Shown: positions 27,550-60,927, counted from the stretch's first letter. The stretch: 64,000 nt of DNA from Mytilus edulis (GCF_963676685.1 NC_092346.1:26226001-26290000); one strand, 5' to 3'. Numbers and translations are program-made. Notes: generated by a model from the letters alone, not told the origin.

Positions 27550-30500
27550 ATGTCTGCGGGTAGAAAGTCAAAACCGAGTGCTTCGCAAGAGGATTCTACT
27601 CCAGCAAAGAAGCAATGCATGGACTTGCTTTTTCATGATGACTCTTCTGTTTCCAAGTTCACGTGGCCAGAAGATGGAAGTGAGTCATCATCATGGCAAA
27701 TTTGTGATGCGGATGCAGGGGATAACTCTAATCCACCAAGCCGTGATGCCACAAATCCACCGAGTCGGGGTAACTCAAATCCACCAAGTTTAGAATCTAC
27801 AAAGACAAATAATTCTTTGAGTAGTGAAGCATTGGATAAAAAGAAATTGATTGAAGATGCATTCGAACAGAATTCTTCACAGTCGACTGCTCCGTTTGTA
27901 TTCCCAAAAACTCCAGCAAATTCTGAAAATGATCTTTCATCACCTAGCACATTTAGCACATCAGGAGAAAGTAACTGTTCTTCACCAAGCACACTAACTT
28001 ACAAAAGCACAAAACAATCCAACAAAAGATTGTGTTCTCCTTGCAGAACACCAAATAATTCTGAAAACGATATTTCATCAACGGGCATATGTAGCGCATC
28101 ATCAAAAAATAATCGTTCCCCACCAATCACAGTCAGTAGCAAAAACACAGACCAATCCGACAGTAGATCGTGTTCTCCTTGCAAAACACCACAAAATTCT
28201 GAAAATGATTTCTCTTCAGCCAGCTCATGTAGCACATCAGCAGTAAGTGATTGTTCTTCACAAAGCACAGTCACTGAAAGTAATTTCTCATCAAGCACAA
28301 CTTTTGAATGTGATTCTTCGCCATCAAACACAAGTATTGCAAGTAGTCAACTTTCTGACAGCACTATCTCACAGAACTCTCAGGATGGCTTGTCTGAAGG
28401 CATACAATCTAAAAAATCTGTCGGCTCGGAAAACAGACAAGTTCCAACTAAACAAACCCGCCTAACCGATTCAAGTGATAGTGATTCGTGTGAAAGTGAT
28501 TCATCCCTAGACCAAGAAATAAAAGCAACACCAAAAGGAAAAAGAAATAATCCTCCTGCAATAAAGGTACAGGATACAAAGGTTCCAGAAAAAATGCACG
28601 ATGACCACGACAAAGAAGAAACAAACATTTTTAAGAATGTGAAAGGTGACAAAACTAAAGAACAGAATCAATCAAAAGGCAAAGACGAAGATAAATTGAG
28701 TGATGACGAAGATGATGTCAGTAATTATTCCGATGAGGATTATTATTGTAATAGCTCTTATTCTGGTAGTGGTAGCGAATATGAAGTTTCGGATAAGTCT
28801 GTTCAATGTAATGGCATATCTCCTCTTCATATCAAGACAAAGGTCGATAGACAAGCGTTTGTAATGAAAATCATGAAAGCGTTCAAATGCAACTCTCTGT
28901 ATGACTCGTTCTGCTTTACTTTGCCTCGGTCAAAGGATGCAATTGACGGATACAATATGACGGTCAATGGATTACTTAGTTTGGCCGATCAGTGTAGGTT
29001 TGGTCTAATCGAGTCGACCTCGATGAACTTTCCAAGTAAAGAATCCATAGATTTCGCAGAAGGAGTTGTCGAAGATATGAGGAAGAGATATAAGGATTTG
29101 TGTCGAGAAGGAGAAAATAGTAACAGTGATTCCCACCATTCTTCAGAAGAAAGCACAAGTAGTATTCTGGAGAAGGAAGTTGACAATGATCTCCCCCATA
29201 ATATTATATTCATGGTTTCCGATGGAATCAAAGACATTGTGTCGACCTGGAGTGGACAATTCCAGGTTTCTACTAATCCAGTTACATATATTATGTCGCT
29301 CCGAATGTTCGATTATAAGCCTTCATTTTCAAACAATATTCGACCAGTTTTCGGTCAGAAACCTGATTTGACGGATGAATTGTGTAAAGATATAGTCAAT
29401 GAAATGGAAAAGTTCGAATGTTCGAGACAATTGCGATTGGATGTAGACTTCCGAACTTTTGAAAGTCTTACATTTTTCAAATGTTCCGAAAACGAAGCTT
29501 TGCTACTTATAAACGTTAAAAGTCCAGCTACATTTTGCCAAAGACTCGTAAATAGCAGCGCCATAGACAGAAACGATTGGCAACCAAGAGACAATTTTCT
29601 CCCTTTTGAGCATGGATGTTATCAGGATTACGTTTTGGTTCTAGGGGGCGTAGTCTCTGAACTTTCAAGTATAGCAGCACAGATAACTGTAGCATTTCCA
29701 AGCGTTAAAATTTTAAACAAAGATATAAACGAGTTTTTGCTCTATCATATCTCGGTAAATACCTCGGGGAAATATAGAAATTTAGAAACTAACGGCAGAC
29801 ACAGAAAATCAACAAATTTGTCTGTTGATCGTCGAAATAACATCATTGATGTTTTGGAAACAAATCATCTTCTTTCAAAAGACAAATGTGAAGAACTAAG
29901 AACAAATATAACAATAACAGAAATTAACTCCAGACTGGGTTCCGAATGTAATGGTTTTGATGGTACGGAATTCCATCCATGTTTCACTGATTACTTAAAC
30001 TATAAATGTTTAGATGTTAGTGAACTGGAGCATCAACTCTCAAGGAGATGTAATATTTCAGAGAAAATGGCTGATGCCAAACTTTTGGATTACAATCCTG
30101 ATTCCAATCCTGATTCCCAGAACATGAGCGTAGCAGAATACCTGGCTTCAAATTCAAATTCGAATTTTTATTATTCTTTCTGTAGCTCAGAAATTATTCC
30201 CAACGACACGTGGCATTGTAAAGTATGTGGCAAATGCAACCAAGAAAACGAATGGCACTGCCCAAAATGTGACAAATGTTCTAAAGCACAACCAGCATGC
30301 CAGCACTGTGGATATGCTGGATATACATATATAATTAAACCAGGCTCGGTGGATGAATCCATGGCGCCAAAATTTGATTGGAAAATCAACTTGAGTACGA
30401 CAGATGTTCCTGATTGGTCTGTTACTCTCGATCATTCGACCGAAAAAGCTTCCTTCAGCATGGACGATTTCATGCAGGATGAGTTTGGATTGATCGATCC

Positions 30501-30630
30501 TATGGCATTTTTGTTGGGTTCTGAGGCTAGAGGCGGCGGGAAAAGACAAGGTCGTCGACTACAAAAGTATGAGAAAAAGATTGAAGGAAATCCTAAAATG
30601 TTAGCGGCAGCAGGATGTATATTGCAATAA
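27550..30630 (+). CDS. Uncharacterised 1026-aa protein (paralogue 1): Ser-rich disordered N-terminus, predicted PH-like domain, Cys/His zinc cluster, C-terminal CaaX (CILQ)
   Basis: Uninterrupted 3081-nt ORF in very AT-rich DNA, with a splice acceptor just upstream of the ATG. It shows collinear similarity to the ORF at 58244-60927 over the C-terminal ~600 aa. Confidence 0.92.
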   Translation: MSAGRKSKPSASQEDSTPAKKQCMDLLFHDDSSVSKFTWPEDGSESSSWQICDADAGDNSNPPSRDATNPPSRGNSNPPSLESTKTNNSLSSEALDKKKLIEDAFEQNSSQSTAPFVFPKTPANSENDLSSPSTFSTSGESNCSSPSTLTYKSTKQSNKRLCSPCRTPNNSENDISSTGICSASSKNNRSPPITVSSKNTDQSDSRSCSPCKTPQNSENDFSSASSCSTSAVSDCSSQSTVTESNFSSSTTFECDSSPSNTSIASSQLSDSTISQNSQDGLSEGIQSKKSVGSENRQVPTKQTRLTDSSDSDSCESDSSLDQEIKATPKGKRNNPPAIKVQDTKVPEKMHDDHDKEETNIFKNVKGDKTKEQNQSKGKDEDKLSDDEDDVSNYSDEDYYCNSSYSGSGSEYEVSDKSVQCNGISPLHIKTKVDRQAFVMKIMKAFKCNSLYDSFCFTLPRSKDAIDGYNMTVNGLLSLADQCRFGLIESTSMNFPSKESIDFAEGVVEDMRKRYKDLCREGENSNSDSHHSSEESTSSILEKEVDNDLPHNIIFMVSDGIKDIVSTWSGQFQVSTNPVTYIMSLRMFDYKPSFSNNIRPVFGQKPDLTDELCKDIVNEMEKFECSRQLRLDVDFRTFESLTFFKCSENEALLLINVKSPATFCQRLVNSSAIDRNDWQPRDNFLPFEHGCYQDYVLVLGGVVSELSSIAAQITVAFPSVKILNKDINEFLLYHISVNTSGKYRNLETNGRHRKSTNLSVDRRNNIIDVLETNHLLSKDKCEELRTNITITEINSRLGSECNGFDGTEFHPCFTDYLNYKCLDVSELEHQLSRRCNISEKMADAKLLDYNPDSNPDSQNMSVAEYLASNSNSNFYYSFCSSEIIPNDTWHCKVCGKCNQENEWHCPKCDKCSKAQPACQHCGYAGYTYIIKPGSVDESMAPKFDWKINLSTTDVPDWSVTLDHSTEKASFSMDDFMQDEFGLIDPMAFLLGSEARGGGKRQGRRLQKYEKKIEGNPKMLAAAGCILQ

Positions 30631-30762
30631 AATATGATAAAAATCAGAATTTACTTCTCTTTCTTATTTTACTCAACTGTTTGAGCAAACAACGTGTCGC
30701 TGTTGAATTGGATTACTTTCGAGTTTGTATTGCAGGAAAAAAAATCCAAGGGTTCCTTCAAC

Positions 30763-30973
30763 GAGGGGGGAGGGGGGGGCATATACCTTTTTATGTTAAC
30801 CTGTTTTGGCCTTTTTCAAGGTGTTGTTAACTGTTATTTGAGATGAATTTAAACTGTTAACTGTTTTAAACCCACTGTGTTAACTGTTATCAGCATTTTT
30901 GTATTTCTTATTAACTGCTTTTACCAAAATCCAGGTGTAATTAACATGTTAACAGACCCCCTATTGTCCCCTC
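30763..30973. mobile_element. MITE with GAGGG...CCCTC ends and near-perfect 6-bp TSD (TTCAAC/TTAAAC)
   Basis: Purine- and pyrimidine-rich inverted ends, internal TGTTAACTG repeats and flanking 6-mers that differ at one base. Confidence 0.65.
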
Positions 30974-32231
30974 TTAAACACACAATTGGTTTATGTTGCC
31001 TTTTATTCATACACATTTAATTCATGCTAACACAAAAATATGAGATGTGGTATGATTGCCAGTCATTGAAGACAACTATCACAAAAAACTAAAGGACGAG
31101 CATGTAAACAGATATATATTTATGTGCGGCCTTCAACTATGAGCAAAATCCGTACTGTAAACTAAGCTTAGCTATAAAATTAACACAACAGATAATAAAT
31201 CAATAAATGAAAATAATTTTGGCATACTAGTATAACAACTCCCACTTATAAGCCCATGGTAAAGACACATAATTAATGTCAATACAATTAAAATATAGGT
31301 CTTTGATTTGGTTATCCTTTTATGATATATTTTCGGGCACTCGACTTACATAGATCTGAATTTCAACTATAAATTGAAGTTAAGTGGTAGTGTTATTGAC
31401 AGTTAATCATGTTTGTGAGAGCTCAACTCGCTTGTATCCTTGGACAGTGGTGCAACATAATAACAACTGTAAAAATCAGTTGGAAAAGCTAACAAAAAAC
31501 TAAAAAAAATTTAACACCAATCAAAAAGTTCTCGCAGTTGCTGAAAGCTAATGAAATACGTATTTCTTCTTTTAAACAAACCATGGTATCGATCTCCGAC
31601 TTTCTTTCACGTCTTTGTTCTTTACTAGAATACTTTTTATGCCCCACCTTCGATAGTAGAGGGGCATCATGTTTTCTGGTCTGTGCGTCCGTTCGTCCGT
31701 CCGTCTGTTCGTTCGTCCGTCTGTTACACTTCAGGTTAAAGTTTTTGGTCAAGGTAGTTATTGATGAAGTTGAAGTCCAATCAACTTAAAACTTAGTATA
31801 CATATTCCCTTAGATAAGATCATTCTAATTGTAATGCCAAATTAGAGAATTTATTCCAATTTCACGGTCCAGAAAACATAGAAAATGATAGGGCGAGTGG
31901 GGCATCCGTGTACTGTGGACACATTCGTGTTTATTAATCAAAACGAATAAATCAGGGCTTGCTTCATACAAAATAATCAACTTAGATAAACCAAAATCTT
32001 GAATGAAAGATTGACAAAACATTCTTACTCTGAATCTGGTATCAAGATTGTTTTTATGTTTGATAGGCGTTTTTTCAAGAGACAGTCTGCATTCCAATGA
32101 GAACCATGTTCACATCGACTGGTTCCTTTTTTGTCACACATTCTCCACATATAAGACTTTTTAAAAGAGGAATTTGAAAGGAAAGTTCGAAGGAGTAAGA
32201 AAAATAATGGAAAAATTTAATATGTCAAATA

Positions 32232-32672
32232 GAATCATATTCAAAACAGTGTGGTCCTGGCCATTGATTGACGATCTGAATTATCCCATTGACTGGGACA
32301 GATTAGGTGAACGTTTGTCTGTAACGACCATTGCTCACTTCTTACTTATTATAGAATTTAGACTGTGGGGTCACCAAAGGTTCTTAACGCCTCTAATAAT
32401 AAAAGAATTCGAAAAATTATTCAGGAATAACCTTTATGTTTTGATTTATATTATTGATATAAATCAACACATTGTATTATTCCGGATTCGTTTTTCGAAT
32501 TGATTTATTTAGGTGTTGAGAACCTTTGGTGACCCCACAGATTCAGCGTCTTTAACAAGTACATAGTGAGCAGTGGTTGTTACCGACAAACGTTCACCTA
32601 ATCTGTCCCAGTCAATGGGGTAATTGAGGTCGTCAATCAATGGCCAGTACCACACTGTTTTGAATATGATTC
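32232..32672. mobile_element. Nested palindromic MITEs: outer TA-flanked element with ~110-bp arms, inner element at 32363-32540
   Basis: Outer: TA|GAATCATATTCAAAACAGTGTGG ... CCACACTGTTTTGAATATGATTC|TA. Inner: CTGTGGGGTCACCAAAGGTTCT ... AGAACCTTTGGTGACCCCACAG. Confidence 0.8.
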
Positions 32673-32930
32673 TAAAAGGAAACGTAAGTTTGATCAAATC
32701 GCTAGCAGTTCAAAAATATCAGTTCCAATCAAATTACAAAGAAGGCACAGAACCAATTCAAAGCAAAAGACAAGATATAAAAAAAATCCACACAAAATGC
32801 ATGTCAAGTCGCAATAAAATAAAGAAATGAGAGAAGAGAAAGCAGATAAAATGATTTAGGGAATAGTCCGAAATGATACATTAAGTATAAAGGTTGGACT
32901 AGGTTAACCGAGCATAAAACTATACAGAAA

Positions 32931-35900
32931 TATTATAACAATAATATTTGGAATTCGTATTGTTGTTTTATGTAGTATGTTGGTCTGCATAGTTAGTTGT
33001 TCTTTAAAGACCCAAACTCTCAACAGACGAATGACTCTGTGAGGGTTGGTCTTGGAATCTTTCCATGATGGGGGAAACTAGCTGGGAACAATGCCTTCGG
33101 TGGTGTACGGCATTGCTGCCGCTGTAAAGGCAGGCCGGGCGTTGTTGCCGATGTAGAGGCAGGCCGGGATCGACTGACACCTATAAGTTTCAAAATTCAA
33201 ACTTTTTTAATAAAATAAATAAAAACAAAAATAATACAAAACAGTTACAAACAACAATAAAGTAAAACAAATATTTTCAATTATTTCCCTAACAGAAAAC
33301 AATAAATATTTTGAATAAACTTCATTTATGATTACTATTTATTATCTTTATTTTAGTTAAACTTATTTAAAATATTTTACTTTAAATCTTAATACTTTTA
33401 AAATCATGACTTACCTATAAGTTTCAAAATTCAAACTTTGACGTCTCAAAGCAGAATTTCTACTTATATAGCAATCACTTAATGACTTTGGTACTAGTTT
33501 GTGCCCTATAGTTTATCAAAGTTAAATTATTGACGTAAGTTGACCATGTCAACCATTGTCCGAAGTTTATGACTTTTTTGTTCATTCTATACTTTCAAAC
33601 AAAGATTTAAGTAATATTTGTTCTATCAGAAAGTTATTTGACCAAAGAAAGTTAGTTTGACCAACGTGAAGTTTACTTGAACTAAAAACTGGACATGAAA
33701 ATTTATCCAATATGTATGTCAAATATCTGTCACAATACATCACTCTCCTTAGAAATTTTGGACTCCAAAATAAAATAAATAATAAAGAAAATTTTAAAGA
33801 AATTGTGTATTTTTATGTTTACTATATTAGTTTGAAAATGGATTTATAACTTTTAATTATTAGTGTAAGTAAATAATCAATATCCATTTTTAAACCTCAA
33901 AACAATATAGAAGACAAACAATTGAGTGATGAAAAAAACCAATGGATGCATAAACATACATCATTTACTTTTTGATTTTAAGCGGGGGAAAAAACTTGAA
34001 CTTAATTCTAATATTTTTCTTTTTTTTTTCTTTCTTTCTTTTTTTTTCATTATTTAGATTCCTTAATCATACTATTTAATTGGTGTTTTTATCTTTATTT
34101 GTTTTATAACTTAATTGATGTTATGATGATGAAATACTATTAAGTATTAATTTTAAATCGTTGTTCTTGAAAGTTTGTTACTCACATGCTTACAAATGAA
34201 CGTTAATTTTTACAGTTGATGAAATGTAATTAGAAATATATGCAAAGTGTTTAAACAAAATGTTGCAAAAATATATGAATTATGAAAAACTTAAATAATC
34301 TTAAACAGAATTTGATTTTGCTTTTATCAGTCTCTAAGTTACTGTCTTATCATTTTGATGGCGTTCCTACTCTTGAGGTAACCCATTTTGTCAATTGATT
34401 GTGGCGTCCCTGCTCCTGAGGTGACCCATGAGTATATTTTGTATGGCGTTCCTTCTTGTGAGGTAACCCATTATATCTATTAATTGTGGCGTCCCTGCTA
34501 TTCAGTTAGCCTGAGCATTATGCGTGCCTATATATGAATATATATTGAATTATTATAACTCTGTACCGGTATTATATTATTCAAAATGTACAGTAAACGG
34601 CAACAAGAATTTTACTAACTTGTTCCTAATAGGTAACTCACAAACAAGGATATTTACGTTATGTAACCCTTAATAAAGTGAACCTAATCTTAAAGACGAC
34701 TGATTGCAAATATTAATCTTGACATGCGTTTGAAATACAAACATTCAGTTCTAATTAACATCATTCTGAAAATGTTATTCAATGGATGATTTAAATGAAT
34801 AAAATTTTACAATACTTTATGAAAAACATAATTTTAAAACTTGTTTAGACAGTCTTTTAGAAAAGTTGTTCTTAAAATTTTAAGACATGAAACGCAATAC
34901 AATTTGTGAAATGAAAATGAACATTTTGTTTCATAGCTGAAAATTTTAAATTAAAATTTAGATTTTAGAAATAAGCTTTTGATGTACTCACAGTTTCATG
35001 AAAATATATGTTTACAATGAAAATACACAACAACATAAATTTAATATTATTGTCACTGATGTTGATAAAAGTTCTTCTCTTATAATAATATGTAACAGTT
35101 CTTCGATATTCAGCTGATGTCGTTGTTCAATGGTGTATTCTAATTATTCACAAATAAATCATTTACTGGAAATATATATAATTAAATAGTCCGAACGGTA
35201 CGAAAATAATGTTCAACTGTAAATATTCCGGTTCGAATTGTCGAAACACTGTCTTAGTTTCTGGCATGCTATTATGATAGGTGTCGATGTTTGGCGTCCA
35301 ACATTTATTAACGGGCCTCCACCAAATATTATAACAATAATTTATGGAATTCGTATTGTTGTTTTATGTAGTATGTTGGTCTGCATAGTTAGTTGTTCTT
35401 TAAAGACCCAAACTCTCAACAGACGAATGACTCTGTGAGGGTTGGTCTTGGAATCTTTCCATGATGGGGGAAACTAGCTGGGAACAATGCCTTCGGTGGT
35501 GTACGGCATTGCTGCCGCTGTAAAGGCAGGCCGGGCGTTGTTGCCGATGTAGAGGCAGGCCGGGATCGACTGACACCTATAAGTTTCAAAATTCAAACTT
35601 TTTTAATAAAATAAATAAAAACAAAAATAATACAAAACAGTTACAAACAACAATAAAGTAAAACAAATATTTTCAATTATTTCCCTAACAGAAAACAATA
35701 AATATTTTGAATAAACTTCATTTATGATTACTATTTATTATCTTTATTTTAGTTAAACTTATTTAAAATATTTTACTTTAAATCTTAATACTTTTAAAAT
35801 CATGACTTACCTATAAGTTTCAAAATTCAAACTTTGACGTCTCAAAGCAGAATTTCTACTTATATAGCAATCACTTAATGACTTTGGTACTAGTTTGTGC

Positions 35901-36133
35901 CCTATAGTTTATCAAAGTTAAATTATTGACGTAAGTTGACCATGTCAACCATTGTCCGAAGTTTATGACTTTTTTGTTCATTCTATACTTTCAAACAAAG
36001 ATTTAAGTAATATTTGTTCTATCAGAAAGTTATTTGACCAAAGAAAGTTAGTTTGACCAACGTGAAGTTTACTTGAACTAAAAACTGGACATGAAAATTT
36101 ATCCAATATGTATGTCAAATATCTGTCACAATA
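32931..36133 (-). mobile_element. Non-autonomous LTR retroelement, 3203 bp, with two 807-bp LTRs
   Basis: Direct repeats at 32931-33737 and 35327-36133 are identical by eye apart from two substitutions near their left ends. TSD GAAA at 32927-32930 and 36134-36137. PBS TGGTGGAGGCCCG on the minus strand at 35312-35324, and PPT-like AAGGAGAGTGA near 33740-33750. No gag or pol ORF. Confidence 0.88.
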
Positions 36134-36195
36134 GAAACGTGAAAGAAGACCAAAAAAGTGCGAGTGACAGATTATCTGTTTTTCTCAGTGTATTA

Positions 36196-36450
36196 GGGAC
36201 GACATCAAAAAATCAATGAAGGATAAAAAAAATTAATTCAAATAGTTTGGGGTTGTTTTTTATGTTTGTTTTTTTTTTGTTGGAAGGAGGGCAAACTTGC
36301 TGCAAGTTTTGTTTAATTGACATCGATTTTATATATATCCTTATTAGTCAATCAATGTTTCAAAAATTAAGTTAAGAGAGGGGGTAGGGGGTCATTGAAA
36401 AAACTATATGAATTAAGATTTTGATCCTACATACTTTTGATATCGTTCCT
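36196..36450. mobile_element. MITE with GGGACGACATCAAAA-type TIRs (PIF/Harbinger-like)
   Basis: AGGGACGACATCAAAA ... TTTTGATATCGTTCCT. A related copy lies at 15480-15662. Confidence 0.6.
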
Positions 36451-37049
36451 GAAAATAGATATAGTAAATTATCAGTCGCTCTAAACAATGCGAAATTAAT
36501 TAGTTCATTCGCTGCGCTTCCTCGCCGAAACTAACGTTTACATAGGGCTAGAATCTGATATTTGTGCAGAAACCAGAAAATGTATACAATCAATATTGCC
36601 TTTTCAATATCAGAAACGAATTGACCCTATATTTCTGAGAGTCTCTGTTTGCCATGTTTGTAATTCGTGAATTGAATGTTTTAGCATGAATTAGGCCTCT
36701 GTTCTCCTCCTTAGAATGTGATCCGTTTTATCATTCTGTGATGTTTCAAATACAAGTATAACTTACTATATTGCATGGAAATGTTCGTTGTTGAAGACCA
36801 AATGTCAACCTTTTAATATTAAGATAATCTGTACAAAAAGGTTTGGCAGTTTGGGGTTTTCCTGCATGCCGCTTGCAATATTAAAATGCAGAGTGTTTGC
36901 CTGCTATCCTCCCTGAATATACCACTGTTGAATATCATTTTGATGTTTATAGAAGAAAGTTTACAAAACAGAAACGGTAACAAGAATGCACAAAAATTTG
37001 AGTTGACTTAAATTTGTAAAGCACAATGACGAAAAGAAAACCCAACGCA

Positions 37050-37320
37050 CAACAGAACACAGACCAATGTACAAAATTCTACACAACACTAAACAGCCCA
37101 AATTACAACAGTCCACACAACACTGACTATAAAGATCAACGTACAACAGTCCACACAAAACTACACAGATAAACTTACAAAAGTCGACACAACACTAAAC
37201 AGCCCAACTTACAAAAGTCCACACAACACTACAAAGATCAACCTACAACGGTTCATACAAGACTACACAGATAAACTTACAAAAGTCCACACAACACTAA
37301 ACAGATTAAATTACAACATA
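37050..37320. repeat. 34-bp CA-rich minisatellite, short array
   Basis: About 8 degenerate units of the type ACAGTCCACACAACACTACACAGATCAACTTAC(A/C). Confidence 0.85.
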
Positions 37321-38016: not shown

Positions 38017-38248
38017 TAAAGCAGCACGACGGGTGCCACATGTGGAGTAGGATCTGCTTACCCTTCCGGAGCACCTTAGATCACCCCTAGTTTTTGTGGG
38101 GTTCGTGTTGTTTGTTCTTTAGTTTTCTATGTTGTGTCATGTGTTCTATTGTTTTTCTGTTTGTCTTTTTCATTTTTAGCCATGGCGTTGTCAGTTTAGT
38201 TGGGATTTATGAGTTTGACTGTCCCTTTGGTATCTTTCGTCCCTCTTT
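38017..38248 (-). mobile_element. Interspersed repeat inserted only in duplication copy A
   Basis: It is absent at the equivalent site of copy B (CATCAGCTAAAGCGCGG near 44490) and is bounded by TAAAGC on both sides. Confidence 0.75.
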
Positions 38249-52500: not shown

Positions 52501-53305
52501 ATTGAGAACCTATGTTGTTTATGGGTAATAGGTGAAATGTTGCATGATCCCTCAAAATGACAGCAAGCGCAGTTTTCCGGACGATTTTCATTTGTACACT
52601 GCTAAAAACTGTCAGGTCCTGGCCATGGTATATTTTGGAGAATTTTTTTTTACTGATTTTTACTAAAAAAATTATTCTCTGTGTGTGCCATTGCAAGAAA
52701 TAGTTTTGCTCGTTATTTTGTCATATTAAAAAAAATTCTCAACAAAATTTTCCCGTTTAAACTGTACTAGAAAAAGTTTGGCATGTGAAACGGACGAAGA
52801 CATATTCTAACAGAAGTACAAATACCAGTCCTCCCTTTTGTGTATACATATGAGAAAACATTTCAAAGTTATTGATTGAATTCAAATCCATCACACATAC
52901 GGTACACATTGTAGTCCGAAAAAATAAAGGACTTCATTCCTATCAAGCACCTTTTTAATTGTTTACCAGTATATTTCTTTTAGTTTTGGGTAAAATTGTA
53001 AAGGAAATAATACTATCAAGATGTCCTTCCATAAATCTTTTTTTTCTGTTCTGACTTTGAAGAAATGACTACTTTTCGCCCAATCGATATGTTGCATGGA
53101 CATATTTTGTTTCATATTATTAGAATTATTTTCAATATTATCGGTATTAAACTTGATTATGGACACATGAAAGTTTGTCAGCATTGTCAATCTTTTAACG
53201 TTAAAGTACCAATAGTTCGGTCACTACTCAATTAAGTTTGTCGATAACGTAGCTAATTTTGACGGTAAAGAAACATCAATTCGATCACTTCTCTGTTACG
53301 GGCTG
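49518..53305. mobile_element. 3.8-kb TA-flanked TIR DNA element with no intact transposase
   Basis: TA|CAGCCCGTAACAGAG..GTGATCGAATT..GTTTCTTTACCGTCA.. at the left end and its reverse complement ending ..CTCTGTTACGGGCTG|TA at the right end. The TIRs are imperfect and about 75 bp long. Confidence 0.8.
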
Positions 53306-53807
53306 TATGTTCAGTAATTTTCCATCTTATATTTACAGTTTGTTCTTATGTTGTACTGTTTAGTTACATCACTGTCCTGTGATAGGCTGGAGTTGAGCAT
53401 TCACAAACATTAGTAACACTATCACATTGTCCAGTCTGATTAGAATGCAGTCATCTCTTAATTAGAGTCCTCGTATATATAATATCATATTAGGATTACG
53501 AAACCAGAGATCTGCATTTTAATAAGATTTTTAGAATCGGTGTCCAAGAAGAGGATGTAATAACCTTCAAATTTATTTTATAGTACGTCTTTCTATGTTG
53601 TGATGTTACACTATTGTTTCGGTAAGGGTGAAGGTTGGTACCTATTGAAACGTTTAAACTCACTGCATTTGTTTGCACGTTTATTATATAGATTAGACCG
53701 TTGGTTTTCCCGTTTGAATAGTTTAACACCACTGAACAGCAGCCCTGTTCTACTAGTAACAAGATGGGTAGTCTTGTTTAACCAATTGCTCACGTAATAT
53801 GATGTGC

Positions 53808-53968
53808 CAGTGGCGGATCCAGAACTTTTCCTAAGGGGTGGGGAGGGCTCTAACTGACCTAAAAGGGGTGACGCTCCAGTCATGCTTCAGTAATTCCCTA
53901 TATAAACAACCAATATTTTTTCCACGACAAAAGGGGGGCGGGCCCCAGCACCCCTCCAGATCCGCCTA
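53808..53968. mobile_element. Short GC-rich MITE (GGCGGATC...GATCCGCC)
   Basis: Inverted ends GGCGGATCCAG and CCAGATCCGCC. A decayed relative lies at 55813-55915. Confidence 0.7.
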
Positions 53969-54804
53969 TATGTAACTGCTGATCCCAGTCAGTGAACCCC
54001 TTTTCGGTAATCACAAATCTGCAACTGTGACGGTAAACCATTATGATGTATATATACTGAGCAAAACAGCAGGAATATTTTTCAGCCGTATGGTATTTAC
54101 GTATAGATAGGAGTTATCAAGGGTGTCAAGTTAAGGTGTTTTCATAAGTTTGCCACAACCCCACTTTTCAGTCTATCATGACGTGACGTACTTCACTAAA
54201 ACGAAATCATTGATACCGCTTTTACGCCAAAAAAATAATCTTTTCTCTTCCTCTTAACTTCAGATACCTTTTACATCAAAAAACTATACTAACCTCCAAT
54301 CAGAGTATGCTAGTCCTAAAGACAGATAAATTGCATGGTTATATGTCGGACTAGTCTACTCTTAAAGAAGGGTAGTGTACCTACCATCTATATGACTTCA
54401 CGGTTAAGCTAGTAATTAGCCAAAGACATTTCCGTAAGTCATTTTGGTATTATATGCAAATTAAATTGAAATATATAATTATTAACACAGCTATAATTCT
54501 GTGAATTTTTTTTTATTATTAAAAATAGGTGTTCGAAATCTAAATCGGATTTTAGTCAACTCTCTCCGATATTGATCTGTAATTCGCAATGAATTTTGAC
54601 AGATAGCGGGAAAATTATATCATTAGTGATTAGGAAAGAGAACAGCTCAGAGAGGGCAGGTATAAAATCAAGACAGATAAGACACAATCATTTAGTGTTC
54701 ATGATGAGAAATGAAAACTTTGTATTAGGATCATGAACATTTATAAAAGTTTAAAATATTCTGAAACAAAAAAAGCAAATTATGAAGAACATGCATAATA
54801 AACG

Positions 54805-54869
54805 CAATAAATGCAACTAGATTACATGTATATAACATTTATATACATGTAATCTAGTTGCATTTATTG
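54805..54869. repeat. Perfect 31-bp inverted repeat with 3-nt loop
   Basis: CAATAAATGCAACTAGATTACATGTATATAA-CAT-TTATATACATGTAATCTAGTTGCATTTATTG. Confidence 0.95.
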
Positions 54870-55425
54870 TGTTTACAACATAAAGTTTACATAGAACTTT
54901 TAAAATAAAAAGAAAAAAAAAATATTCACCTATATAAACTAAAATTTTTCCAAATTATGCATTTCCCCAATTGGTGTGCTTCTAACTGTTCAGTATTTAT
55001 AAAAAGAAAAAAGAAAATGTGGTATGATTGCCAATGAGACAACTGTATATCCACAAGAGACCAAAATGACACAGAAATTAACAAATATATGTCACTGTAC
55101 GACCTTGAACAATGAGCAAAGCCCATAATGCATAGTCAGCTTTAAAAGGCCCCAAATGACAAGTGAATTCAAAGAAGAAAACTGCCTTATTTTTTAAGCC
55201 AATTTCTAGCAATTCAAGTGAATCACTTTTATTGCCTATAATTGACAAATTTAGTCTTTGTTGGTCAAATAGAATTGTTACAGTTCTATACATGTTTTTT
55301 TTTCTTCATTAAACCAATTGAGAGGCGCTATGATTACAAACATGGACATCAATTAGTGCTTACATGTACATGTATAAATGCATATATACAGACTTGTGAC
55401 AGTAGAAAAATTTATATGGAGATAA

Positions 55426-55747
55426 AACAGGCTATTATTTGAACTTGGAATTATTTTTAATTATGGAATTTCCATAATTTCTTGTGTCTAAAATTTTTAG
55501 TAAATTCTAAGTTTATTTGGTATTATAATCTTTTGAGCGGTTAATAACACTTTCCATTAAATGTATTTTGGTTAGATAGTGTTGTGCGCGGCACAGTACA
55601 TTCTATTGAAAATATACTATTTACTTTGTAATAGAAAGTGTTGTGCACAGCACAGAATAAACATGGAATTTTTTTTAAATTTTAATAACAAGAAAACAAG
55701 CAAATTCCATAATTAAAAATAATTCCAAGTTCAAATAATAGTCTGTT
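55426..55747. mobile_element. MITE with ~45-60-bp TIRs
   Basis: AACAGGCTATTATTTGAACTTGGAATTATTTTTAATTATGGAATTT pairs with AAATTCCATAATTAAAAATAATTCCAAGTTCAAATAATAGTCTGTT. Confidence 0.85.
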
Positions 55748-56249
55748 ATAAATACAATTTGATATTAAACAAAACAATTAACAGGTTGGGACCCCCTCTC
55801 CAGGTGAGGGACAGTGGCTGATCAAGAAATTTTTACATGTGGCGGCCCACTCCAGTCATGCTTGCCTTCTGTGATTCCCTGTTTAAAAAAACCCTGTCCT
55901 CCTCTAATTGCACCTCTAAGGGGTACTCCTTAAATGAGGGACTGTCAGTCAATCAAGGGGTCACTTTGCTGTTGTAGAAAATAAAACAGAAAAACTTATT
56001 GTTTGTTGATGAGTTACATATAAGTTTTTTGTTCATATGTTATTCCGGGTACGCGTACGTAAATAAGACAGTTAGTGTCTTGTTTGAATTGTTTCACATT
56101 TGTGATTTCGGCCGGGGCCTTTTATAGCTGACTATGCCACATGGGCTTTGCTCATTGTTGAAGGCCTAATAGTGCCCTATACTTGTTAATTTCTGTGTCA
56201 TATGTTATCTTGTGAAGAGTTGTCTCATTGGCAATCACACCACATCTTT

Positions 56250-56973
56250 TTTTAGGCTCACCTGGCCCTATTGGGCCAAGTGAGTATTTTTTAGCGTCCG
56301 TCCCCTGTTGTCGTCATTAGCTTTTTACATTTTAAACTTCTATAGAACCACTGATTGGAATGAAACCAAACATGGCATGAATGTTCCTTATGAGGTGCTG
56401 GCTAAGTGTTGTTACTTTAAAGCTGATCCATCATCAAAGATGGCCGTGGCTGCCAGCAGGGGACTTAGTTTAACATAGAACCCTATGGGATATACATATA
56501 AATGTCTTTTTATAGAGAACAACTGAATGGAATGAAACCAAACAGGAATGTTCCTTATGAGGTGCTGACCATGTGTTGTTACTTTGAAGCCGATCCATCT
56601 GACATCTAAGATGGCCGCCAATCATGCCAATGGATGACTAAGTTTTACATAAGACCCTAGGGGAAATACATACAAATGTCATCTTTTAGAGAAACACTCA
56701 ATGGAATGAAACCAAACATAGCATGAATGTTCCTTTAGAGGTTCTGACCAAGTGTTGTTACTTTGCAGCCGATTCATTATCTAAGATGGCCGCCAGGGGG
56801 GAACTAAAGTTTAGCATAGGAAAATCTTCTTTTAGAGAACCACAGAATAGAATGCAATATTTAACCAAATTTGGTCTCAATCATTATTTAAGTACCTGTT
56901 ATGATTTTTATCTTTTTTCAAAAATTCAAGTAGAGTTAGGTGAGCAACACAGGCTCCTGAGAGCCTCTAGTTA
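56250..56973. mobile_element. HINE/pearl-like element with about three ~180-bp internal repeats
   Basis: Subterminal hairpin GCTCACCTGGCCC..GGGCCAAGTGAG, repeated GGAATGAAACCAAAC..AATGTTCCTTATGAGGTGCTG..AAGATGGCCG units, and the terminus GGTGAGCAACACAGGCTCCTGAGAGCCTCTAGTT. Confidence 0.8.
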
Positions 56974-57752
56974 TATTAGCTTTGCTTTTGACTTAAAAGG
57001 GGAAAATTCTTTATAATTTCAAACAACTTTTCTCACTTTCTTTTAATATTGGAGAAGATGCAAGTCAATGAATATTACAAAATTCTTGGAAATGTTTTGA
57101 CCATATGATACCAGGTAGACGTATAGTTCTTTGGGAAAAGTTTCTTCAAATATTATAAATATGTTCCCTTTTGTACTTTTTGAAGTGGTTTTTCAAATGT
57201 ACAATATTTAAAAGGGGTGCTCATTACTTTGAGGGGTTAACCCTTATTTTGTTCCCAACCTGAGTAAAGTTGTACTATAAAAAAAAAATGTAATCTCCTT
57301 TGAAACATTTATTAGGTACTGATTATCAGATTGTCTGCAAAATGATATTGTAAAATATCAGCTGCAAGTTACAAAATGAAGATTTTTTGTATTCTTCCTA
57401 TTGTTTCGAGCAGCTGCTATTTTACAATCTCTATATACAGATTTCGGGCTGTATTTGTGTCATTTGAAGTGTCATACCCCTAGCCAGGTGGGTTCAGGGG
57501 GTTTGGACACCCCCCGCCTTGAAAACAAATAATCACTGTTAAAGTCAATGTTCTGTTCGAATTGTGACTGTGAAAGTCAAGTTTGTGAGTCCATCAAAAC
57601 CCCAAATTGGAAATTCCTGGCTACAGGCCTGAGTGTTTTTCTGTGTTTCACCAGCAAACCAAAAGATGACTTGATAAGTTCAGGTCAGACTTATTATAAA
57701 CTAATATTTTTCTATTTTCAGTCCAGAAAAGCTTCTTATATACCGAAGTAAA

Positions 57753-60700
57753 ATGGATCCAGGCTTAGAAGAAAAAGGTAATAAATTAAAGATAAAAAAG
57801 GTAGAAACCAAAAAAGTACATTTTGGTTCATTTACGGTATATTTAGCCAAAGTGCTTCCTTCATAAAAAAAAATCTAATGAATAATCACATATAAAAACA
57901 TGAACAACAGCAAAAAAAAAAAAAAAATTGATTTACACTAGGTTACATATCAAAATAAGATCTGATATTGTCAATGTAAATTTACCCCAGAATAGAGGTC
58001 TCCTACGAACCTTTATTATAAACATTACCATAATATCTGTTCCAGTTGGAACAAATATAATAATGATAAGGTTTAATTATGGTCAAATGTGTAAAAATTA
58101 TAAATGCATAAAGAAGATTTTTTTTTCTGGACATAGGATAACTAGTTTACAACTGAATCAAAATCGAAAAAAAAATAATTCCACACCGTTTTACATTAAA
58201 ATTTCCTCTTTATTCATAAATCTTGAATTTTTACCTTTTTCAGGATCAAACAATAGTGCCGGTTCTGAAACACCTATGGATACAGCTGAAGGGTCAAGTG
58301 ACTCCAAAAGTCCTAAACGTAGTAAAAATGATAAGTTACTAGACTCTGACTCTAGCAGTCCATGGTCTGACTTTCCCAGCTTGAGTGACGATGATTCATC
58401 TGAGGAAGAAGACATTGAGGAAGGTGAACGCACAAGTCAGATTAAACTGGACAGATTGTTCTGGTATCTTTATTCTAGGTTATTGAAAGATAAAACATGT
58501 TTAAATGACATTTACACAGACCTTTTTGCTAATCCTGGACTTTATGACAAGTTTAAATTCATCAAGAAAATCATGAATGCTTGTGAGTTTGGACCAACCT
58601 TTGATACTTTTTGTTTTTCCCTGCCAAGGCCAGATAATATGGAGAACGATTTCAAAAGAGCTGTTCACAGCATGAAAGAGCTTCTAAAGAAGTGTCAAGA
58701 TGGGTCTGTTACAACAACTTGTATGAATTCTTTAGATTTTCCTTCGGAGTCATCCAAACAAATGGCGGAAAAATTATTGCAGAAGTTAAAGAAGAAACTT
58801 GAAAGAGAACCAGTTGAACAACCCAAACAAGATAAAGCTCTTCGTGAACAAACAAAGAAGGCTGAACAAATCCCAGATAAGGGGGTCAATGGTACTAAAA
58901 ATGATGATCAGGACACAAGTTTTAAAGAAAAAGCTTCCTCCAATGCATCAAATACAAGTAAAAAAGAAACCAGTTCCAAAAATAATACTAGTTGCAAGGA
59001 AGACAATACCAGTCTAAAGGCCGCAAATTCTCAGGATCAAGAAAAGAAGGTAAATGGTTCTAAAACAAATGCTGGTTCCTATTCTGAAAATGATGATCTA
59101 AAGGACACCAGTTCTAAAGAAAAAGCTACATCCAAAGCATCAAAAACTAGTAAAAAAGAAACCAGTTCCAAAAATAATACTAGTTCCAAGGAAGATAATG
59201 CCAGTCAAAAGGCCACCAGTTCTAAGGATCAAGATAAGCAGACACCAGATGATCCAGATGCAGAACATGATCAGAATGAGGAAAGCATAGACGAAAACCA
59301 GGAGGAGCACAATGATTCAGACTGGGATTATTATGGAGCTGAAGAGGAGTTTGATGAACTTACAGAGGATAAAAAAATAAATAAGATTCTTGCAAATAGC
59401 TTCCCACATAATATAATTTATTTGCTGTCGGATGGAAAAACAGATATTATACCATCTTGGTGTGGTCAGATACAGGTTCTTGTCAATCCTGTCAATAAAA
59501 TATTGTCATTTTTGATGTATGATTATGTACCATTGTATCCAGATGATATAAGAGGAGCGATATTAAATGGAATGTCAGCACCAGTTGTCCGTAGAAACAT
59601 TGCTAAGGAACTTGAGAAGTTTGAATGTTGCAGACTGTTAAGGATGGATGTTCCACTAAAAAGCTTGGAAGAATTGTTTGTAGTTCAGCCAAATGATAGG
59701 GAGTTCCTCATATTTTCAAAATTGACTCCTCCTGCAAAATTTTATCAGAGATATATCAGTGTCAGTTGCAGGGATCGAAATAATTGGAGTGAAAGGCAGC
59801 CATTTTTACCTTTTGAAGGTCATTCGTTTTCCGATTGTTCAAGAAAGTATATGCTCATTTTTGGTGGAGAAGTTTCAGAGATGTCAGACATCATGGCACA
59901 GATAATTGCATGTAGACCAGAACAAAAAATATGTACTGAACCAAAGGGAAAAATTACTATGGTGGATCTAATAGAAAAATTAAATGAAAATGGTGATCCA
60001 GAAAATTCCAGTGCAATTAACACTCACTCTAGAGAGGAGGAGACTGAGCATCAAAATATAGATGTTAATATAAGGCACAGGAACAATATATTGGACATGT
60101 TGATTAAGTACAAAATTATCAATGAAGATCAGGGTGAAAAAATTAAACAGAATGTGGATTTGAAACAAAAAAAGCCACAAAATAAGAAGATAAACAACTT
60201 TCTTGACAAGCTAGATCTTGACCCATGTTTGAAGGATTATGTCAATTTTGGATGTGAAGATGTCAGCAAATTGGAGAAGCACTTGACAAAAAAATTAGAA
60301 GCTGGAGAATATGGCCATGAAATGGAGAGCTTGATGTTGAAATATCCAGAAAGATACAACTTTGATGATATAACAGTTGCTGAATTCCTTAATGCAGAAA
60401 AAGAGGATAAAAGCTATAGGACTCTTTTTTATTCCTTTTGCAGGTCTGAACCAGAACAATGCGACTGCACATGGCACTGTAAGGTATGCAAGCAGTGCCA
60501 GGATTGGAGATCTTGGCATTGTTCCAACTGCAACAAATGTGCATATGGCATATCAAATTCCATATGTGAATATTGTGGCTATAAAAGTTCTGGAAAATTT
60601 ATTCTTCAGCCTGATTCATATCACACAGAAAAAATAGAAGCATATGAAGGAATGTATACTTGTAATAAAATAAAAGACCACTGGAATTTAAAGTTGTCCA

Positions 60701-60927
60701 TAGATGATGTCCCGGATTGGACAAAAGAGGTGAAAGTTGATGATGAAAGTTCAGGAGACTTCAAGCTAAAAGATTATATAAACAGGGATGACCTTGGAAT
60801 AGTTAACCTTTGGGCATTGGCTATAGGGTTGTCTGGTAGTGGTCCAAGGAGGCACATTGGTCGTTTCTTCACTGAGTATTTTAGATATCAAATTGCAGAA
60901 AATATTCCTCTGATTGTGTTACATTAA
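57753..60927 (+). CDS. Uncharacterised ~902-aa protein (paralogue 2): same conserved blocks and zinc cluster as 27550-30630, no CaaX
   Basis: join(57753-57777, 58244-60927). The micro-exon MDPGLEEK+G (acceptor TTTTCAG at 57721, donor AAG|GTAATA) splices in frame to TTTTTCAG|GATCA. The first ~105 aa of the listed ORF 57928-60927 are intronic read-through. Confidence 0.9.

What the first reader, a model, noticed from the sequence alone, without database searches (positions are those of the whole stretch)
27550..60927. Pair of diverged, essentially intronless paralogues defining an unannotated multidomain protein family
Seen in sequence: two intact ORFs of about 3 kb, 27 kb apart, share ordered blocks (paralogue 1/paralogue 2). 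These are [192 protein letters not shown], a double WHC zinc cluster and DVPDW. Linkers are heavily diverged yet both frames are open, which indicates an old duplication under purifying selection. I recognise no named gene. Single giant coding exons next to a 17-exon gene suggest origin by retroposition, domestication of a mobile element or horizontal acquisition (inference). This is the best candidate here for an undescribed system.
Basis: partly seen in the sequence, partly recalled or inferred. Interest (0 to 1): 0.85.

Follow-up and report, generated by a model that had tools for sequence, protein, structure and literature searches.

The report
Mussel PH–zinc-finger gene trio
The two long open reading frames are real, expressed-looking mussel genes (part of a tandem trio) belonging to an ancient but completely uncharacterised eukaryotic protein family that combines a PH-like domain, a three-zinc cysteine module and, in the ancestral-type copy, a lipid-anchor (CaaX) signal; they are not transposon cargo, retrocopies or foreign DNA.

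Summary
Observation confirmed. ORF 27550-30630 (P1, 1026 aa) and ORF ending at 60927 (P2) are paralogues: 32% identity over 532 aa, E 2e-83. A third paralogue (P3) lies about 9 kb beyond the window. The genome is Mytilus edulis, and RefSeq already predicts these genes as "uncharacterized protein".

Interpretation partly supported. The family has no direct Pfam hit. Profile comparison and an AlphaFold model show a central PH-like domain homologous to Pfam PF24818 (TRF2/HOY1 PH-like; fold nearest the RDR2 PH-like region). It is followed by a helical plus 12-ligand Cys/His module that has no Pfam model and only faint resemblance to ZCCHC4, DHHC and CHY zinc domains.

The same architecture occurs in a sponge, Acrasis and unnamed canonical PF24818 proteins, in partial form (zinc module) in amphioxus, and, by weaker single hits, in Physarum, Cyanophora and Paratrimastix. 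P1 and many distant relatives end in C-a-a-Q (14 of 150 representatives against 1.1 expected), a farnesylation box. P2 and P3 have lost it.

The tandem arrangement, low copy number, dN/dS of about 0.2 and a probably shared 5' intron argue against retroposition, transposon cargo or horizontal transfer. Contigs from four small, RNA-like runs cover P1 but not its unique flanks.

Function is inferred only: a lipid-anchored adaptor. An earlier scan note (s1-832671) had already flagged the PH-like resemblance.

The parts
27530..27536 (+). Probable 3' splice acceptor (ttttcag) 13 nt upstream of the P1 start codon; implies a 5'UTR intron
   Evidence: Sequence read. RNA-like contigs begin at 27535 and 27541 (table 8). 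The 5' exon was not located.
27550..30630 (+). P1 coding sequence, 1026 aa, single coding exon (stop codon included)
   Evidence: Identical protein P0001 is in the collection. Orthologues of 89-94% identity occur in M. trossulus, M. galloprovincialis and M. californianus.
27550..28839 (+). P1 aa 1-430: Ser-rich disordered region with 3 x 138-nt and 3 x 24-nt tandem repeats
   Evidence: repeat families D1, D2. Only 74% identical to M. californianus.
28840..29100 (+). P1 aa 431-517: N-terminal helical block (KIMKA..DSFCFTLPR..FPSKES), confined to the bivalve-like clade
   Evidence: Alignment A1. AF2 helices 3-94 of the model. HMM hits in 24 of the 180 collected proteins.
29173..29718 (+). P1 aa 542-723: PH-like domain homologous to Pfam PF24818 (TRF2/HOY1 PH-like), with an insertion of about 45 aa
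   Evidence: AF2 model pLDDT is mostly 80-91 here. VIA-align gives PH-superfold hits only, top ZmRDR2 7w84_A residues 106-306, Z 7.5, rmsd 3.2, 129 aligned. hhalign of A1 against the canonical PF24818 protein P0133 gives 97.3%, E 2.4e-11, and against P0022 gives 99.8%, E 2e-27.
29827..30051 (+). P1 aa 760-834: helical segment (RRNNIIDVL ... PCFTDYLNYKC) that precedes and packs with the zinc module
   Evidence: Alignments A1 and A3. AF2 model of the module has pLDDT 83. HMM hits in 50 of the 180 collected proteins.
30157..30318 (+). P1 aa 870-923: Cys/His zinc module. It has 12 near-invariant ligands (C878, H889, C890, C893, C896, H903, C904, C907, C910, C917, C920 and neighbours), enough for three Zn sites
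   Evidence: Near-invariant columns in A3 and A4, 70 and 68 sequences. Foldseek and VIA give only weak hits: ZCCHC4 6uca (E 0.05, Z 2.7), DHHC20 and Pirh2 CHY. No Pfam model matches.
30319..30615 (+). P1 aa 924-1022: tail predicted to be disordered yet highly conserved (W.I.LS..DVPDW, D.FGLIDP.AFLLG, basic patch)
   Evidence: 94-100% identical among Mytilus species. Motifs are conserved in A1. Low pLDDT.
30616..30627 (+). P1 C-terminal CILQ: CaaX (farnesylation-type) box
   Evidence: 14 of 150 representatives end C-a-a-[QSMACT] against 1.08 expected, and C..Q$ occurs 11 times against 0.18 expected.
30631..31220 (+). P1 3'UTR, with AATAAA signals around 31194-31210
   Evidence: Contig cover in runs X2, X3 and X10 falls to zero after about 31220. 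Sequence read.
57753..57777 (+). P2 coding exon 1 (MDPGLEEK + 1 nt)
   Evidence: Joined with exon 2 in a script, the translation equals RefSeq protein P0161 exactly.
57778..58243 (+). P2 intron (GT...AG, 466 nt)
58244..60927 (+). P2 coding exon 2 (stop codon included). It holds the helical block 58543-58809, a Ser/Lys-rich insert, the PH-like domain 59383-59937, helices 60064-60297 and the zinc module 60418-60585. It ends ...IPLIVLH with no CaaX box

Best explanation
The two ORFs are ordinary host genes of Mytilus edulis. They are two of three tandem, same-strand paralogues: P1, P2, and P3 just beyond the window. They come from a mussel-lineage expansion of an ancient eukaryotic protein family that nobody has characterised.

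The family core has three parts:
1. A PH-like beta-sandwich of the Pfam PF24818 (TRF2/HOY1) kind, structurally nearest the PH-like part of plant RDR2.
2. A short helical segment carrying two conserved cysteines.
3. A compact module of about 50 aa with 12 near-invariant Cys/His ligands, which most likely binds three zinc ions.

Bivalve members add an N-terminal helical block and long disordered regions.

P1 keeps the ancestral C-terminus: a conserved tail with a basic patch that ends in CILQ. This is a CaaX box of the type that protein farnesyltransferase accepts. I infer that P1 is farnesylated and works as a lipid-anchored adaptor on a membrane or the nuclear envelope. Its PH-like and zinc modules would hold a protein or nucleic-acid partner. 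P2 and P3 arose by DNA-level tandem duplication. They lost the CaaX box and evolve under purifying selection, presumably as non-anchored derivatives.

Shown: paralogy, family membership, fold, ligand conservation, CaaX conservation, tandem low-copy state, purifying selection, and contig evidence compatible with transcription of P1.

Inferred: zinc binding, farnesylation, localisation and the adaptor role.
For: Paralogy: BLASTP E 2e-83.

Copy number and arrangement: only C3 26254837, 26285272 and 26299544, plus two copies on C157. P3 is intact.

Species and orthologues.

Family size: a full HMMER scan of 1.84e9 proteins gave 157 representatives at E<=1e-3, of which 11 at E<=1e-30.

Shared architecture:
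- hhalign of A1 against Acrasis P0022, which carries PF24818: 99.8%, 336 columns.
- Against sponge P0038: 99.7%, 368 columns.
- Against amphioxus P0112: 99.5%, 159 columns.
- Against the canonical PF24818 protein P0133: 97.3% across its whole Pfam domain.
- PF24818 plus the same zinc module also occur together in P0141, P0147 and P0019.

Fold: the AF2 model and its PH-superfold-only hit list, top RDR2 at Z 7.5. Atlas leads point to PF24823 and PF24818.

Zinc module: a confident model at pLDDT 83 and near-invariant ligands.

CaaX: (binomial P 7e-12, without correction for shared ancestry).

Tree: the P1 clade is sister to (P2, P3), support 100/99.

Selection.

Transcription: four small contig sets from four studies tile 27535-30630 and the 3'UTR, with zero depth on the unique flanks 26100-26690 and 31222-31615.
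Against: - No member of the family has an experimentally known function, and no paper was found on PF24818 or PF24823.
- P1 itself does not reach any Pfam threshold, so the PF24818 link is transitive.
- Farnesylation, zinc binding and localisation are untested. The basic patch lies 15-25 residues from the Cys, not adjacent as in K-Ras4B.
- The runs used for expression are only guessed to be RNA. P2 and P3 expression was not examined here.
- PH-superfold hits at Z 5-7.5 fall in the range the tool calls common.
- The CaaX statistics treat representatives as independent although they are related.
Confidence: 0.6

Rival explanations
1. A nuclear, nucleic-acid- or chromatin-directed factor rather than a membrane adaptor. 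The PH-like domain would work as in RNA-dependent RNA polymerase RDR2 or the homeobox protein HOY1. The zinc module would bind RNA or DNA as the C-terminal CCHC domain of the rRNA methyltransferase ZCCHC4 does. The basic patch would be a nuclear localisation signal. The CaaX box would tether the protein to the inner nuclear membrane or kinetochore, as in lamins and CENP-E/F.
For: The best structural neighbour of the PH domain is RDR2. The best neighbour of the zinc module, though weak, is ZCCHC4. Rare relatives carry Chromo or CXC domains. From general knowledge, the C..Q ending is also that of the farnesylated nuclear or kinetochore proteins CENP-E, CENP-F and Spindly.
Against: All the structural similarities are weak (E >= 0.01, Z <= 7.5). 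At least one Chromo fusion is suspect: one relative also carries an integrase SH3 domain, so it may be a chimeric call on a short contig. No nucleic-acid-binding test exists. This reading is compatible with, rather than exclusive of, the best explanation.
Confidence: 0.25
2. Retrocopies or domesticated transposon cargo: single giant exons created by reverse transcription or carried by a mobile element.
For: Nearly the whole CDS sits in one exon. Copies of one interspersed repeat flank P1 in direct orientation. One or two distant relatives are fused to chromovirus integrase-like domains.
Against: - The genome has only three tandem copies, plus a diverged scaffold copy.
- P2 has a 5' intron, and P1 has an acceptor at the equivalent place.
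- I saw no A-rich tail downstream of the poly(A) signals. Target-site duplications were not specifically searched for.
- The flanking repeat is a high-copy element of about 200-300 bp that is also present elsewhere in the window. Its two copies differ by internal deletions.
- No reverse transcriptase, transposase or integrase was found in the proteins.
- The family is spread across eukaryotic supergroups.
Confidence: 0.05
3. A cryptic DHHC-type protein acyltransferase or CHY/RING-type ubiquitin-ligase zinc domain.
For: The spacing HC-x2-C-x2-C-x5-WHC-x2-C-x2-C resembles the DHHC cysteine-rich domain and the CHY/CTCHY finger. There are weak hits to DHHC (Pfam E 0.7), to DHHC20 and Pirh2 by Foldseek and to DHHC20 by profile.
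Against: The position of the catalytic DHHC His is an invariant Trp (xWHC) and the Asp is not conserved. No transmembrane segment is present: the maximum 19-aa hydropathy is 1.57, inside the PH domain. There is no RING domain. All matches lie far below family thresholds.
Confidence: 0.03
4. Horizontally acquired gene.
For: Single-exon structure.
Against: Among the 30 hit clusters looked up, every one that carries an organism name is eukaryotic, and the bivalve sequences form one clade. The ORF GC content (35-37%) is the usual coding excess over 30-33% flanks. Orthologues occur in four Mytilus species and a unionid.
Confidence: 0.02

Closest known systems
Pfam PF24818 (PH_TRF2_HOY1, TRF2/HOY1 PH-like domain) proteins that also carry the C-terminal Cys/His module. 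Examples are Acrasis kona KAL0483811.1, Paratrimastix pyriformis KAJ4454553.1, Corticium candelabrum XP_062511320.1 and the unnamed representatives P0133 and P0147
   Same: Same order of PH-like domain, helical segment and zinc module. The profile-profile match runs over 336-368 columns for Acrasis and the sponge. A C-terminal CaaX-type ending is present in several (Paratrimastix CCIS; P0045 and P0088 CPVQ).
   Different: The mussel proteins miss the Pfam threshold and have an insertion of about 45 aa in the PH domain. They also have an extra N-terminal helical block and very long Ser-rich disordered regions. None of these relatives has a known function either.
PH-like region of plant RNA-dependent RNA polymerase 2 (maize RDR2, PDB 7w84/7w82; Pfam PF24823 PH_RDR2)
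   Same: Best structural neighbour of the central domain (Z 7.5, rmsd 3.2 A, 129 residues; Foldseek E 0.013). It is also the nearest named cluster in the protein atlas (0.89).
   Different: There is no polymerase catalytic domain, no sequence-level match, and the similarity is confined to one domain.
Cysteine-rich zinc domains of ZCCHC4 (PDB 6uca, C-terminal CCHC domain), DHHC palmitoyltransferases (6bml) and Pirh2 CHY finger (2dkt)
   Same: Similar spacing of CxxC knuckles around an 'HC' pair. These are the top, though weak, structural and profile hits for the zinc module.
   Different: E >= 0.05 and Z 2.7. There is no DHHC catalytic motif, no membrane helices, no methyltransferase and no RING. 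The helical segment with two extra conserved Cys has no counterpart.
CaaX-box farnesylated proteins ending in Q (CENP-E, CENP-F, Spindly, LKB1, PRL phosphatases; from general knowledge, not tested here)
   Same: Cys at position -4, aliphatic a1 and a2 (I, L) and X = Q in P1. The ending is conserved in orthologues and distant relatives.
   Different: Only the four-residue signal is shared. The rest of the protein is unrelated.

Membership tests
Pfam PF24818 PH_TRF2_HOY1 | Direct match to the Pfam HMM above the gathering score (24 bits) | tested here: not met
   No PF24818 hit for P1, P2 or any of the 15 members of A1, even at E<=1.
Pfam PF24818 PH_TRF2_HOY1 | Homology to bona fide members shown by profile comparison over the whole domain | tested here: met
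   A1 against P0133 (PF24818 E 1.2e-23 at residues 83-197): 97.3%, E 2.4e-11, covering P0133 74-217. A1 against P0022: 99.8%. phmmer hit P0019 (E 5.8e-12 on P1's PH region) carries PF24818 at 23 bits.
Pfam PF24818 PH_TRF2_HOY1 | PH-like fold (seven-stranded sandwich capped by a C-terminal helix) | tested here: met
   AF2 gives strands 121-271 and helix 273-286. The hit list is made almost wholly of PH, PTB and FERM-F3 domains. Z values of 5-7.5 are only moderate.
CaaX prenylation substrates | Cys exactly four residues from the C-terminus, aliphatic a1 and a2, X specifying farnesyltransferase (S, M, A, Q, C) | tested here: met
   P1 ends CILQ. P2 (..IVLH) and P3 (..NFRL) do not meet it.
CaaX prenylation substrates | Conservation of the box in orthologues and relatives | tested here: met
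   CILQ or CVLQ in four Mytilus species and Sinanodonta. 14 of 150 representatives against 1.08 expected.
CaaX prenylation substrates | Actual lipid modification | not testable with these tools
   Needs metabolic labelling, mass spectrometry or farnesyltransferase-inhibitor experiments.
DHHC palmitoyltransferases | D-H-H-C catalytic motif within the cysteine-rich domain, and four or more transmembrane helices | tested here: not met
   The motif is x-W-H-C with an invariant Trp. Pfam DHHC gives E 0.7 and 10 bits against a cut-off of 28.7. No hydrophobic segment of TM strength is present.
Processed retrogene | No introns, dispersed location, poly(A) remnant and target-site duplication | tested here: not met
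   P2 has an intron and P1 has an acceptor before its ATG. The copies are tandem. No A-tract was seen after the 3'UTR; target-site duplications were not specifically searched for.
Transposon cargo | Many dispersed copies bounded by terminal repeats, with transposition genes | tested here: not met
   5 loci in 1.37 Gb. The flanking repeats are unrelated high-copy short elements. No transposase, RT or integrase domain was found.

The most novel reading that the evidence does not exclude
The mussel genes expose an undescribed, eukaryote-wide family of farnesylated proteins. A PF24818/RDR2-type PH-like domain is coupled to a new three-zinc module that has no Pfam model and no convincing PDB neighbour. 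Given the kinship of the PH domain with RNA-dependent RNA polymerases and of the zinc module with an rRNA methyltransferase accessory domain, the family could tether an RNA- or chromatin-related activity to a membrane or the nuclear envelope. The Mytilus trio would then be a natural experiment in loss of the anchor.
Probability: 0.3. Interest if true: 0.65.

Novelty: new member of a known kind. Interest (0 to 1): 0.42.

Why it matters
The genes themselves are ordinary lineage-specific duplicates. The work does show three things about the family:

1. A domain catalogued in Pfam only as 'TRF2/HOY1 PH-like' is regularly joined to a conserved zinc module that has no family model.
2. This architecture reaches from excavate protists to sponges and bivalves, with the helical and zinc part alone also found in amphioxus.
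3. Many members end in a farnesylation box.

This gives a concrete, cheap hypothesis for a family with no known function: lipid-anchored PH plus zinc adaptors. It also offers a natural anchored versus non-anchored paralogue set in Mytilus for testing it. Finally, it would justify a new Pfam entry for the helical and zinc module.

Tried and rejected
Searches that returned nothing informative:
- Direct Pfam scans of P1, P2 and 15 family members gave nothing.
- PDB sequence searches with P1 and with profile A1 gave nothing below E 0.1.
- The atlas search with P1 aa 520-1000 gave no usable hit.
- The search for homologous proteins with alignments A1 and A5 returned only near-identical proteins, because low-complexity words filled the candidate list. 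Its blanks say nothing about distant kin.
- Literature searches for PF24818, PF24823, TRF2/HOY1 and HOY1 found no paper on the domain family. I could not establish what 'TRF2' in the Pfam name refers to, and I make no claim about it.

Tools unavailable or capped:
The taxa of the unnamed ENA and Logan relatives, and the exon structure of orthologues outside Mytilus, therefore could not be checked.
- The first read-laying run failed as busy and the repeat worked.
- Complex prediction was not used because no specific partner is claimed.

Readings rejected:
- The large joint 26806->31730 in the read table looked at first like a repeat split by insertion of the gene. Alignment showed two separate copies of one high-copy repeat that contain the same segments.
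- The DHHC-enzyme and CHY/RING readings were rejected on motif grounds.
- Chromo and integrase-SH3 co-occurrences in one or two relatives were judged probable chimeric calls.

Handling of the spliced P2 model: no search tool was given the joined two-exon P2 model. All searches used the large exon by reference. The join was translated only inside a script to compare it with the RefSeq protein.
Full report
**1. The observation**

The window has exactly two ORFs longer than 200 aa between 27000 and 61500. They are 27550..30630 (+, 1026 aa, ATG) and 57928..60927 (+). BLASTP gives 32% identity over 532 residues (E 2e-83) and a second collinear block of 35% over 75 residues (E 4e-10). The paralogy is real and far beyond chance.

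**2. Where we are, and how many copies exist**

Near-identical proteins are RefSeq models called 'uncharacterized protein' from Mytilus trossulus, M. galloprovincialis, M. californianus and M. edulis. The contig length of the M. edulis record equals that of the window's own protein record. The genome is therefore Mytilus edulis, and the genes are predicted but uncharacterised.

A six-frame search of the whole 1.37-Gb assembly finds only these places:
- the two window genes;
- a third intact paralogue about 9 kb beyond the window end (P3, L004:724-3114);
- two copies on a 32.6-kb unplaced scaffold, C157.

The C157 segment is 88-90% identical to the P2-P3 segment in both coding and flanking DNA. 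It is either a very divergent haplotype or a segmental duplicate.

**3. Gene structure**

P1's ORF equals the database protein. An excellent acceptor (ttttcag) ends 13 nt before its ATG, and the RNA-like contigs start at 27535 and 27541. A 5'UTR intron is therefore likely.

P2's true CDS has three parts: a 25-nt first exon (57753-57777), a GT..AG intron (57778-58243) and one 2.68-kb exon (58244-60927). Translated inside a script, the join equals XP_071162041.1 exactly. No search tool was given the joined model; all searches used the large exon by reference.

'Essentially intronless' is thus right for the coding body. Both genes, however, seem to keep an intron at the same place just upstream of it.

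**4. Transposon, retrocopy or foreign DNA?**

- The copies are few, tandem and co-oriented.
- The repeats that flank P1 in direct orientation (about 26690-26845 and 31640-31935) are two independently decayed copies of a short, extremely abundant interspersed repeat. A third copy lies at 20827 on the other strand.
- No A-rich tail follows the poly(A) signals near 31194-31210. Target-site duplications were not specifically searched for.
- No transposition domain is detectable.
- GC content is the normal coding excess over the flanks.
- In a maximum-likelihood tree, the P1 clade (four Mytilus species) is sister to the (P2, P3) clade with support 100/99. This pair sits inside a larger clade that includes the unionid Sinanodonta woodiana.

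The trio therefore arose by DNA-level tandem duplication in the mussel lineage, before the edulis/trossulus/galloprovincialis split.

**5. Selection and expression**

Nei-Gojobori estimates:
- P2-P3: dN 0.36, dS 1.76, ratio 0.21.
- P2-C157 copy: ratio 0.24.
- P3-C157 copy: ratio 0.42.
- P1-P2: synonymous sites saturated.

Between M. edulis and M. californianus the disordered first 430 residues of P1 are 74% identical. The helical block, PH-like domain, zinc module and C-terminal tail are 92-94% identical.

Twenty public runs hold at least 78% of the sampled words of P1. Fourteen of them have contig sets of only 39-98 Mb, far too small for a 1.37-Gb genome, and are guessed to be RNA.

I laid four such runs, from four studies, on 26100-32000. 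Contigs tile 27535-30630, and in three runs they also cover the 3'UTR to about 31220. The unique flanks 26100-26690 and 31222-31615 have zero depth in all four runs. That pattern is what a transcript gives. It is not proof, because the library type is not on record.

**6. What the protein is**

Pfam finds nothing in P1, P2 or 13 relatives, and PDB sequence searches find nothing.

A full HMMER scan of 1.84 billion representatives finds 157 relatives at E<=1e-3. Eleven are full-length (E<=1e-30). Most of the others match only P1 residues about 807-927.

Relatives that carry an organism name:
- Sinanodonta woodiana
- Corticium candelabrum (sponge)
- Branchiostoma (three species)
- Physarum polycephalum
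- Cyanophora paradoxa
- Acrasis kona
- Paratrimastix pyriformis

All are annotated as hypothetical, or misnamed.

An AlphaFold model built on a 15-sequence alignment (mean pLDDT 64.5, domains 80-91) shows this order:
- a helical block;
- a beta-sandwich capped by a helix (model residues 121-286, P1 aa 550-715);
- further helices;
- small beta-hairpins.

Against 48,161 PDB representatives, the sandwich matches essentially only PH-superfold domains. The best is maize RDR2 residues 106-306 (Z 7.5, rmsd 3.2 A, 129 aligned). FERM-F3, Sin1, FACT, TFIIH p62 and REC114 PH domains follow.

Sequence profiles make the link specific:
- Several distant relatives carry Pfam PF24818 (TRF2/HOY1 PH-like) upstream of the same zinc module: P0022, P0141, P0133, P0147, and P0019 just below threshold.
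- The family profile aligns to Acrasis P0022 at 99.8% over 336 columns.
- It aligns to the sponge protein at 99.7% over 368 columns.
- It aligns to the canonical PF24818 protein P0133 at 97.3% (E 2.4e-11), exactly across its Pfam domain.

The mussel domain carries an insertion of about 45 residues, which explains why it misses the Pfam threshold. The atlas's nearest named clusters, PF24823 PH_RDR2 (0.89) and PF24818 (0.82), agree but are only leads.

**7. The zinc module**

Alignments of 70 and 68 relatives show near-invariant S-F-C, H-C, C, C, W-H-C, C, C, C, C. In P1 these are C878, H889, C890, C893, C896, W902, H903, C904, C907, C910, C917 and C920. Upstream lies the conserved pair C811/C820 in 'PCF.DY.NF.C'. 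Twelve ligands suffice for three zinc ions; this is an inference.

A dedicated AlphaFold model of P1 aa 800-935 is confident (pLDDT 83, pTM 0.74). It shows two helical hairpins packed on six short strands.

It has no convincing neighbour in the PDB:
- Foldseek's best hit is the C-terminal CCHC domain of ZCCHC4 (E 0.05).
- DHHC20 and the Pirh2 CHY finger come next.
- VIA-align's best score is Z 2.7.

The spacing resembles the DHHC cysteine-rich domain. However, the catalytic His position is an invariant Trp, the Asp is not conserved, and there are no membrane helices. An acyltransferase is therefore excluded.

**8. The C-terminus**

P1 ends CILQ. Other endings are:
- M. californianus orthologue and Sinanodonta: CVLQ.
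- Other full-length relatives: CNLQ, CSIQ, CFMQ, CNMQ.
- More distant relatives: CPVQ, CAQQ, CVLQ, CTLM, CYIM, CCIS.

Among 150 representatives, 14 end in C-a-a-[QSMACT] against 1.08 expected from the pattern's frequency within the same proteins. C..Q$ occurs 11 times against 0.18 expected. These figures are not corrected for shared ancestry.

This is the CaaX signal for prenylation, and X = Q directs farnesyltransferase (established knowledge). The preceding tail is predicted to be disordered, yet it is 94-100% conserved among Mytilus. It contains a basic patch and the short motifs DVPDW and D.FGL..P. P2 and P3 keep the motifs but have lost the Cys box.

**9. Most likely mechanism**

I commit to the following, at moderate confidence. 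P1 is a farnesylated, peripherally membrane-bound (or nuclear-envelope-bound) adaptor. Its PH-like and zinc modules bind a partner. P2 and P3 are non-anchored derivatives kept by selection.

The main rival concerns the partner and the compartment. In that reading the protein is a nuclear RNA- or chromatin-directed factor. This is suggested by the RDR2 and ZCCHC4 resemblances and by rare Chromo or CXC fusions. At least one such fusion looks like a chimeric call, because one relative also carries an integrase SH3 domain.

Nothing here tests lipidation, metal binding, localisation or binding partners.

**10. Verdict**

- The reading 'uncharacterised multidomain family under purifying selection' is supported.
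- The readings 'unannotated', 'retroposition, domestication or horizontal acquisition' and 'undescribed system' are not supported.
- The genes are new, divergent members of an existing but functionally blank eukaryotic family.
- What is possibly new is at family level: a recurrent PH (PF24818-type) plus three-zinc architecture without a Pfam model for the zinc part, and a conserved farnesylation box.
- Interest is moderate.

As a result, the taxa of unnamed relatives and the exon structures outside Mytilus are unknown.

Noticed in passing
G000:C3:26298767-26301160 (L004:724-3117), about 9 kb beyond the window end: A third intact tandem paralogue (P3, about 797 aa, 54% identical to P2, no CaaX box). 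The M. galloprovincialis orthologue is XP_076099834.1.
   Followed up: partly
G000:C157 (L002, L005), a 32.6-kb unplaced scaffold: P2-like and P3-like copies 88-90% identical to the C3 segment in both coding and flanking DNA (aa 89% and 85%, dS about 0.2), both with open frames. This is either a divergent haplotype or a segmental duplication.
   Followed up: partly
window 27719-27803 and 27909-28322: Tandem repeats inside the P1 disordered region (3 x 24 nt and 3 x 138 nt). Public contigs show length variants there: a 12-nt loss at 28155 in one run and an alternative join 27975->28143 in two runs.
   Followed up: no
window about 26690-26845 (+), 31640-31935 (+), 20827-20856 (-): Copies of a short, very high-copy interspersed repeat with a (CGTC/CGTT)n-like core. 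It reaches word depths of 1e4-1e5 in small RNA-like contig sets, so it is abundantly transcribed or embedded in many transcripts.
   Followed up: partly
window 32230-32674: An inverted repeat with 126-nt arms (90% complementary) 193 nt apart, with nested shorter inverted repeats. It looks like a MITE or hairpin element downstream of P1.
   Followed up: no
protein CAG2204477.1 (P0163), in the 90% cluster of the C157 P3-like copy: An older M. edulis annotation names a 412-aa fragment of this family 'ANO6'. This is probably a naming error or a mis-fusion with another gene.
   Followed up: no
window 58850-59330 (P2 linker between the helical block and the PH-like domain): A Ser/Lys-rich insert of about 190 aa with an internal duplication (..[19 protein letters not shown]..), absent from P1 and much shorter in P3. 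The linker is expanding rapidly.
   Followed up: no
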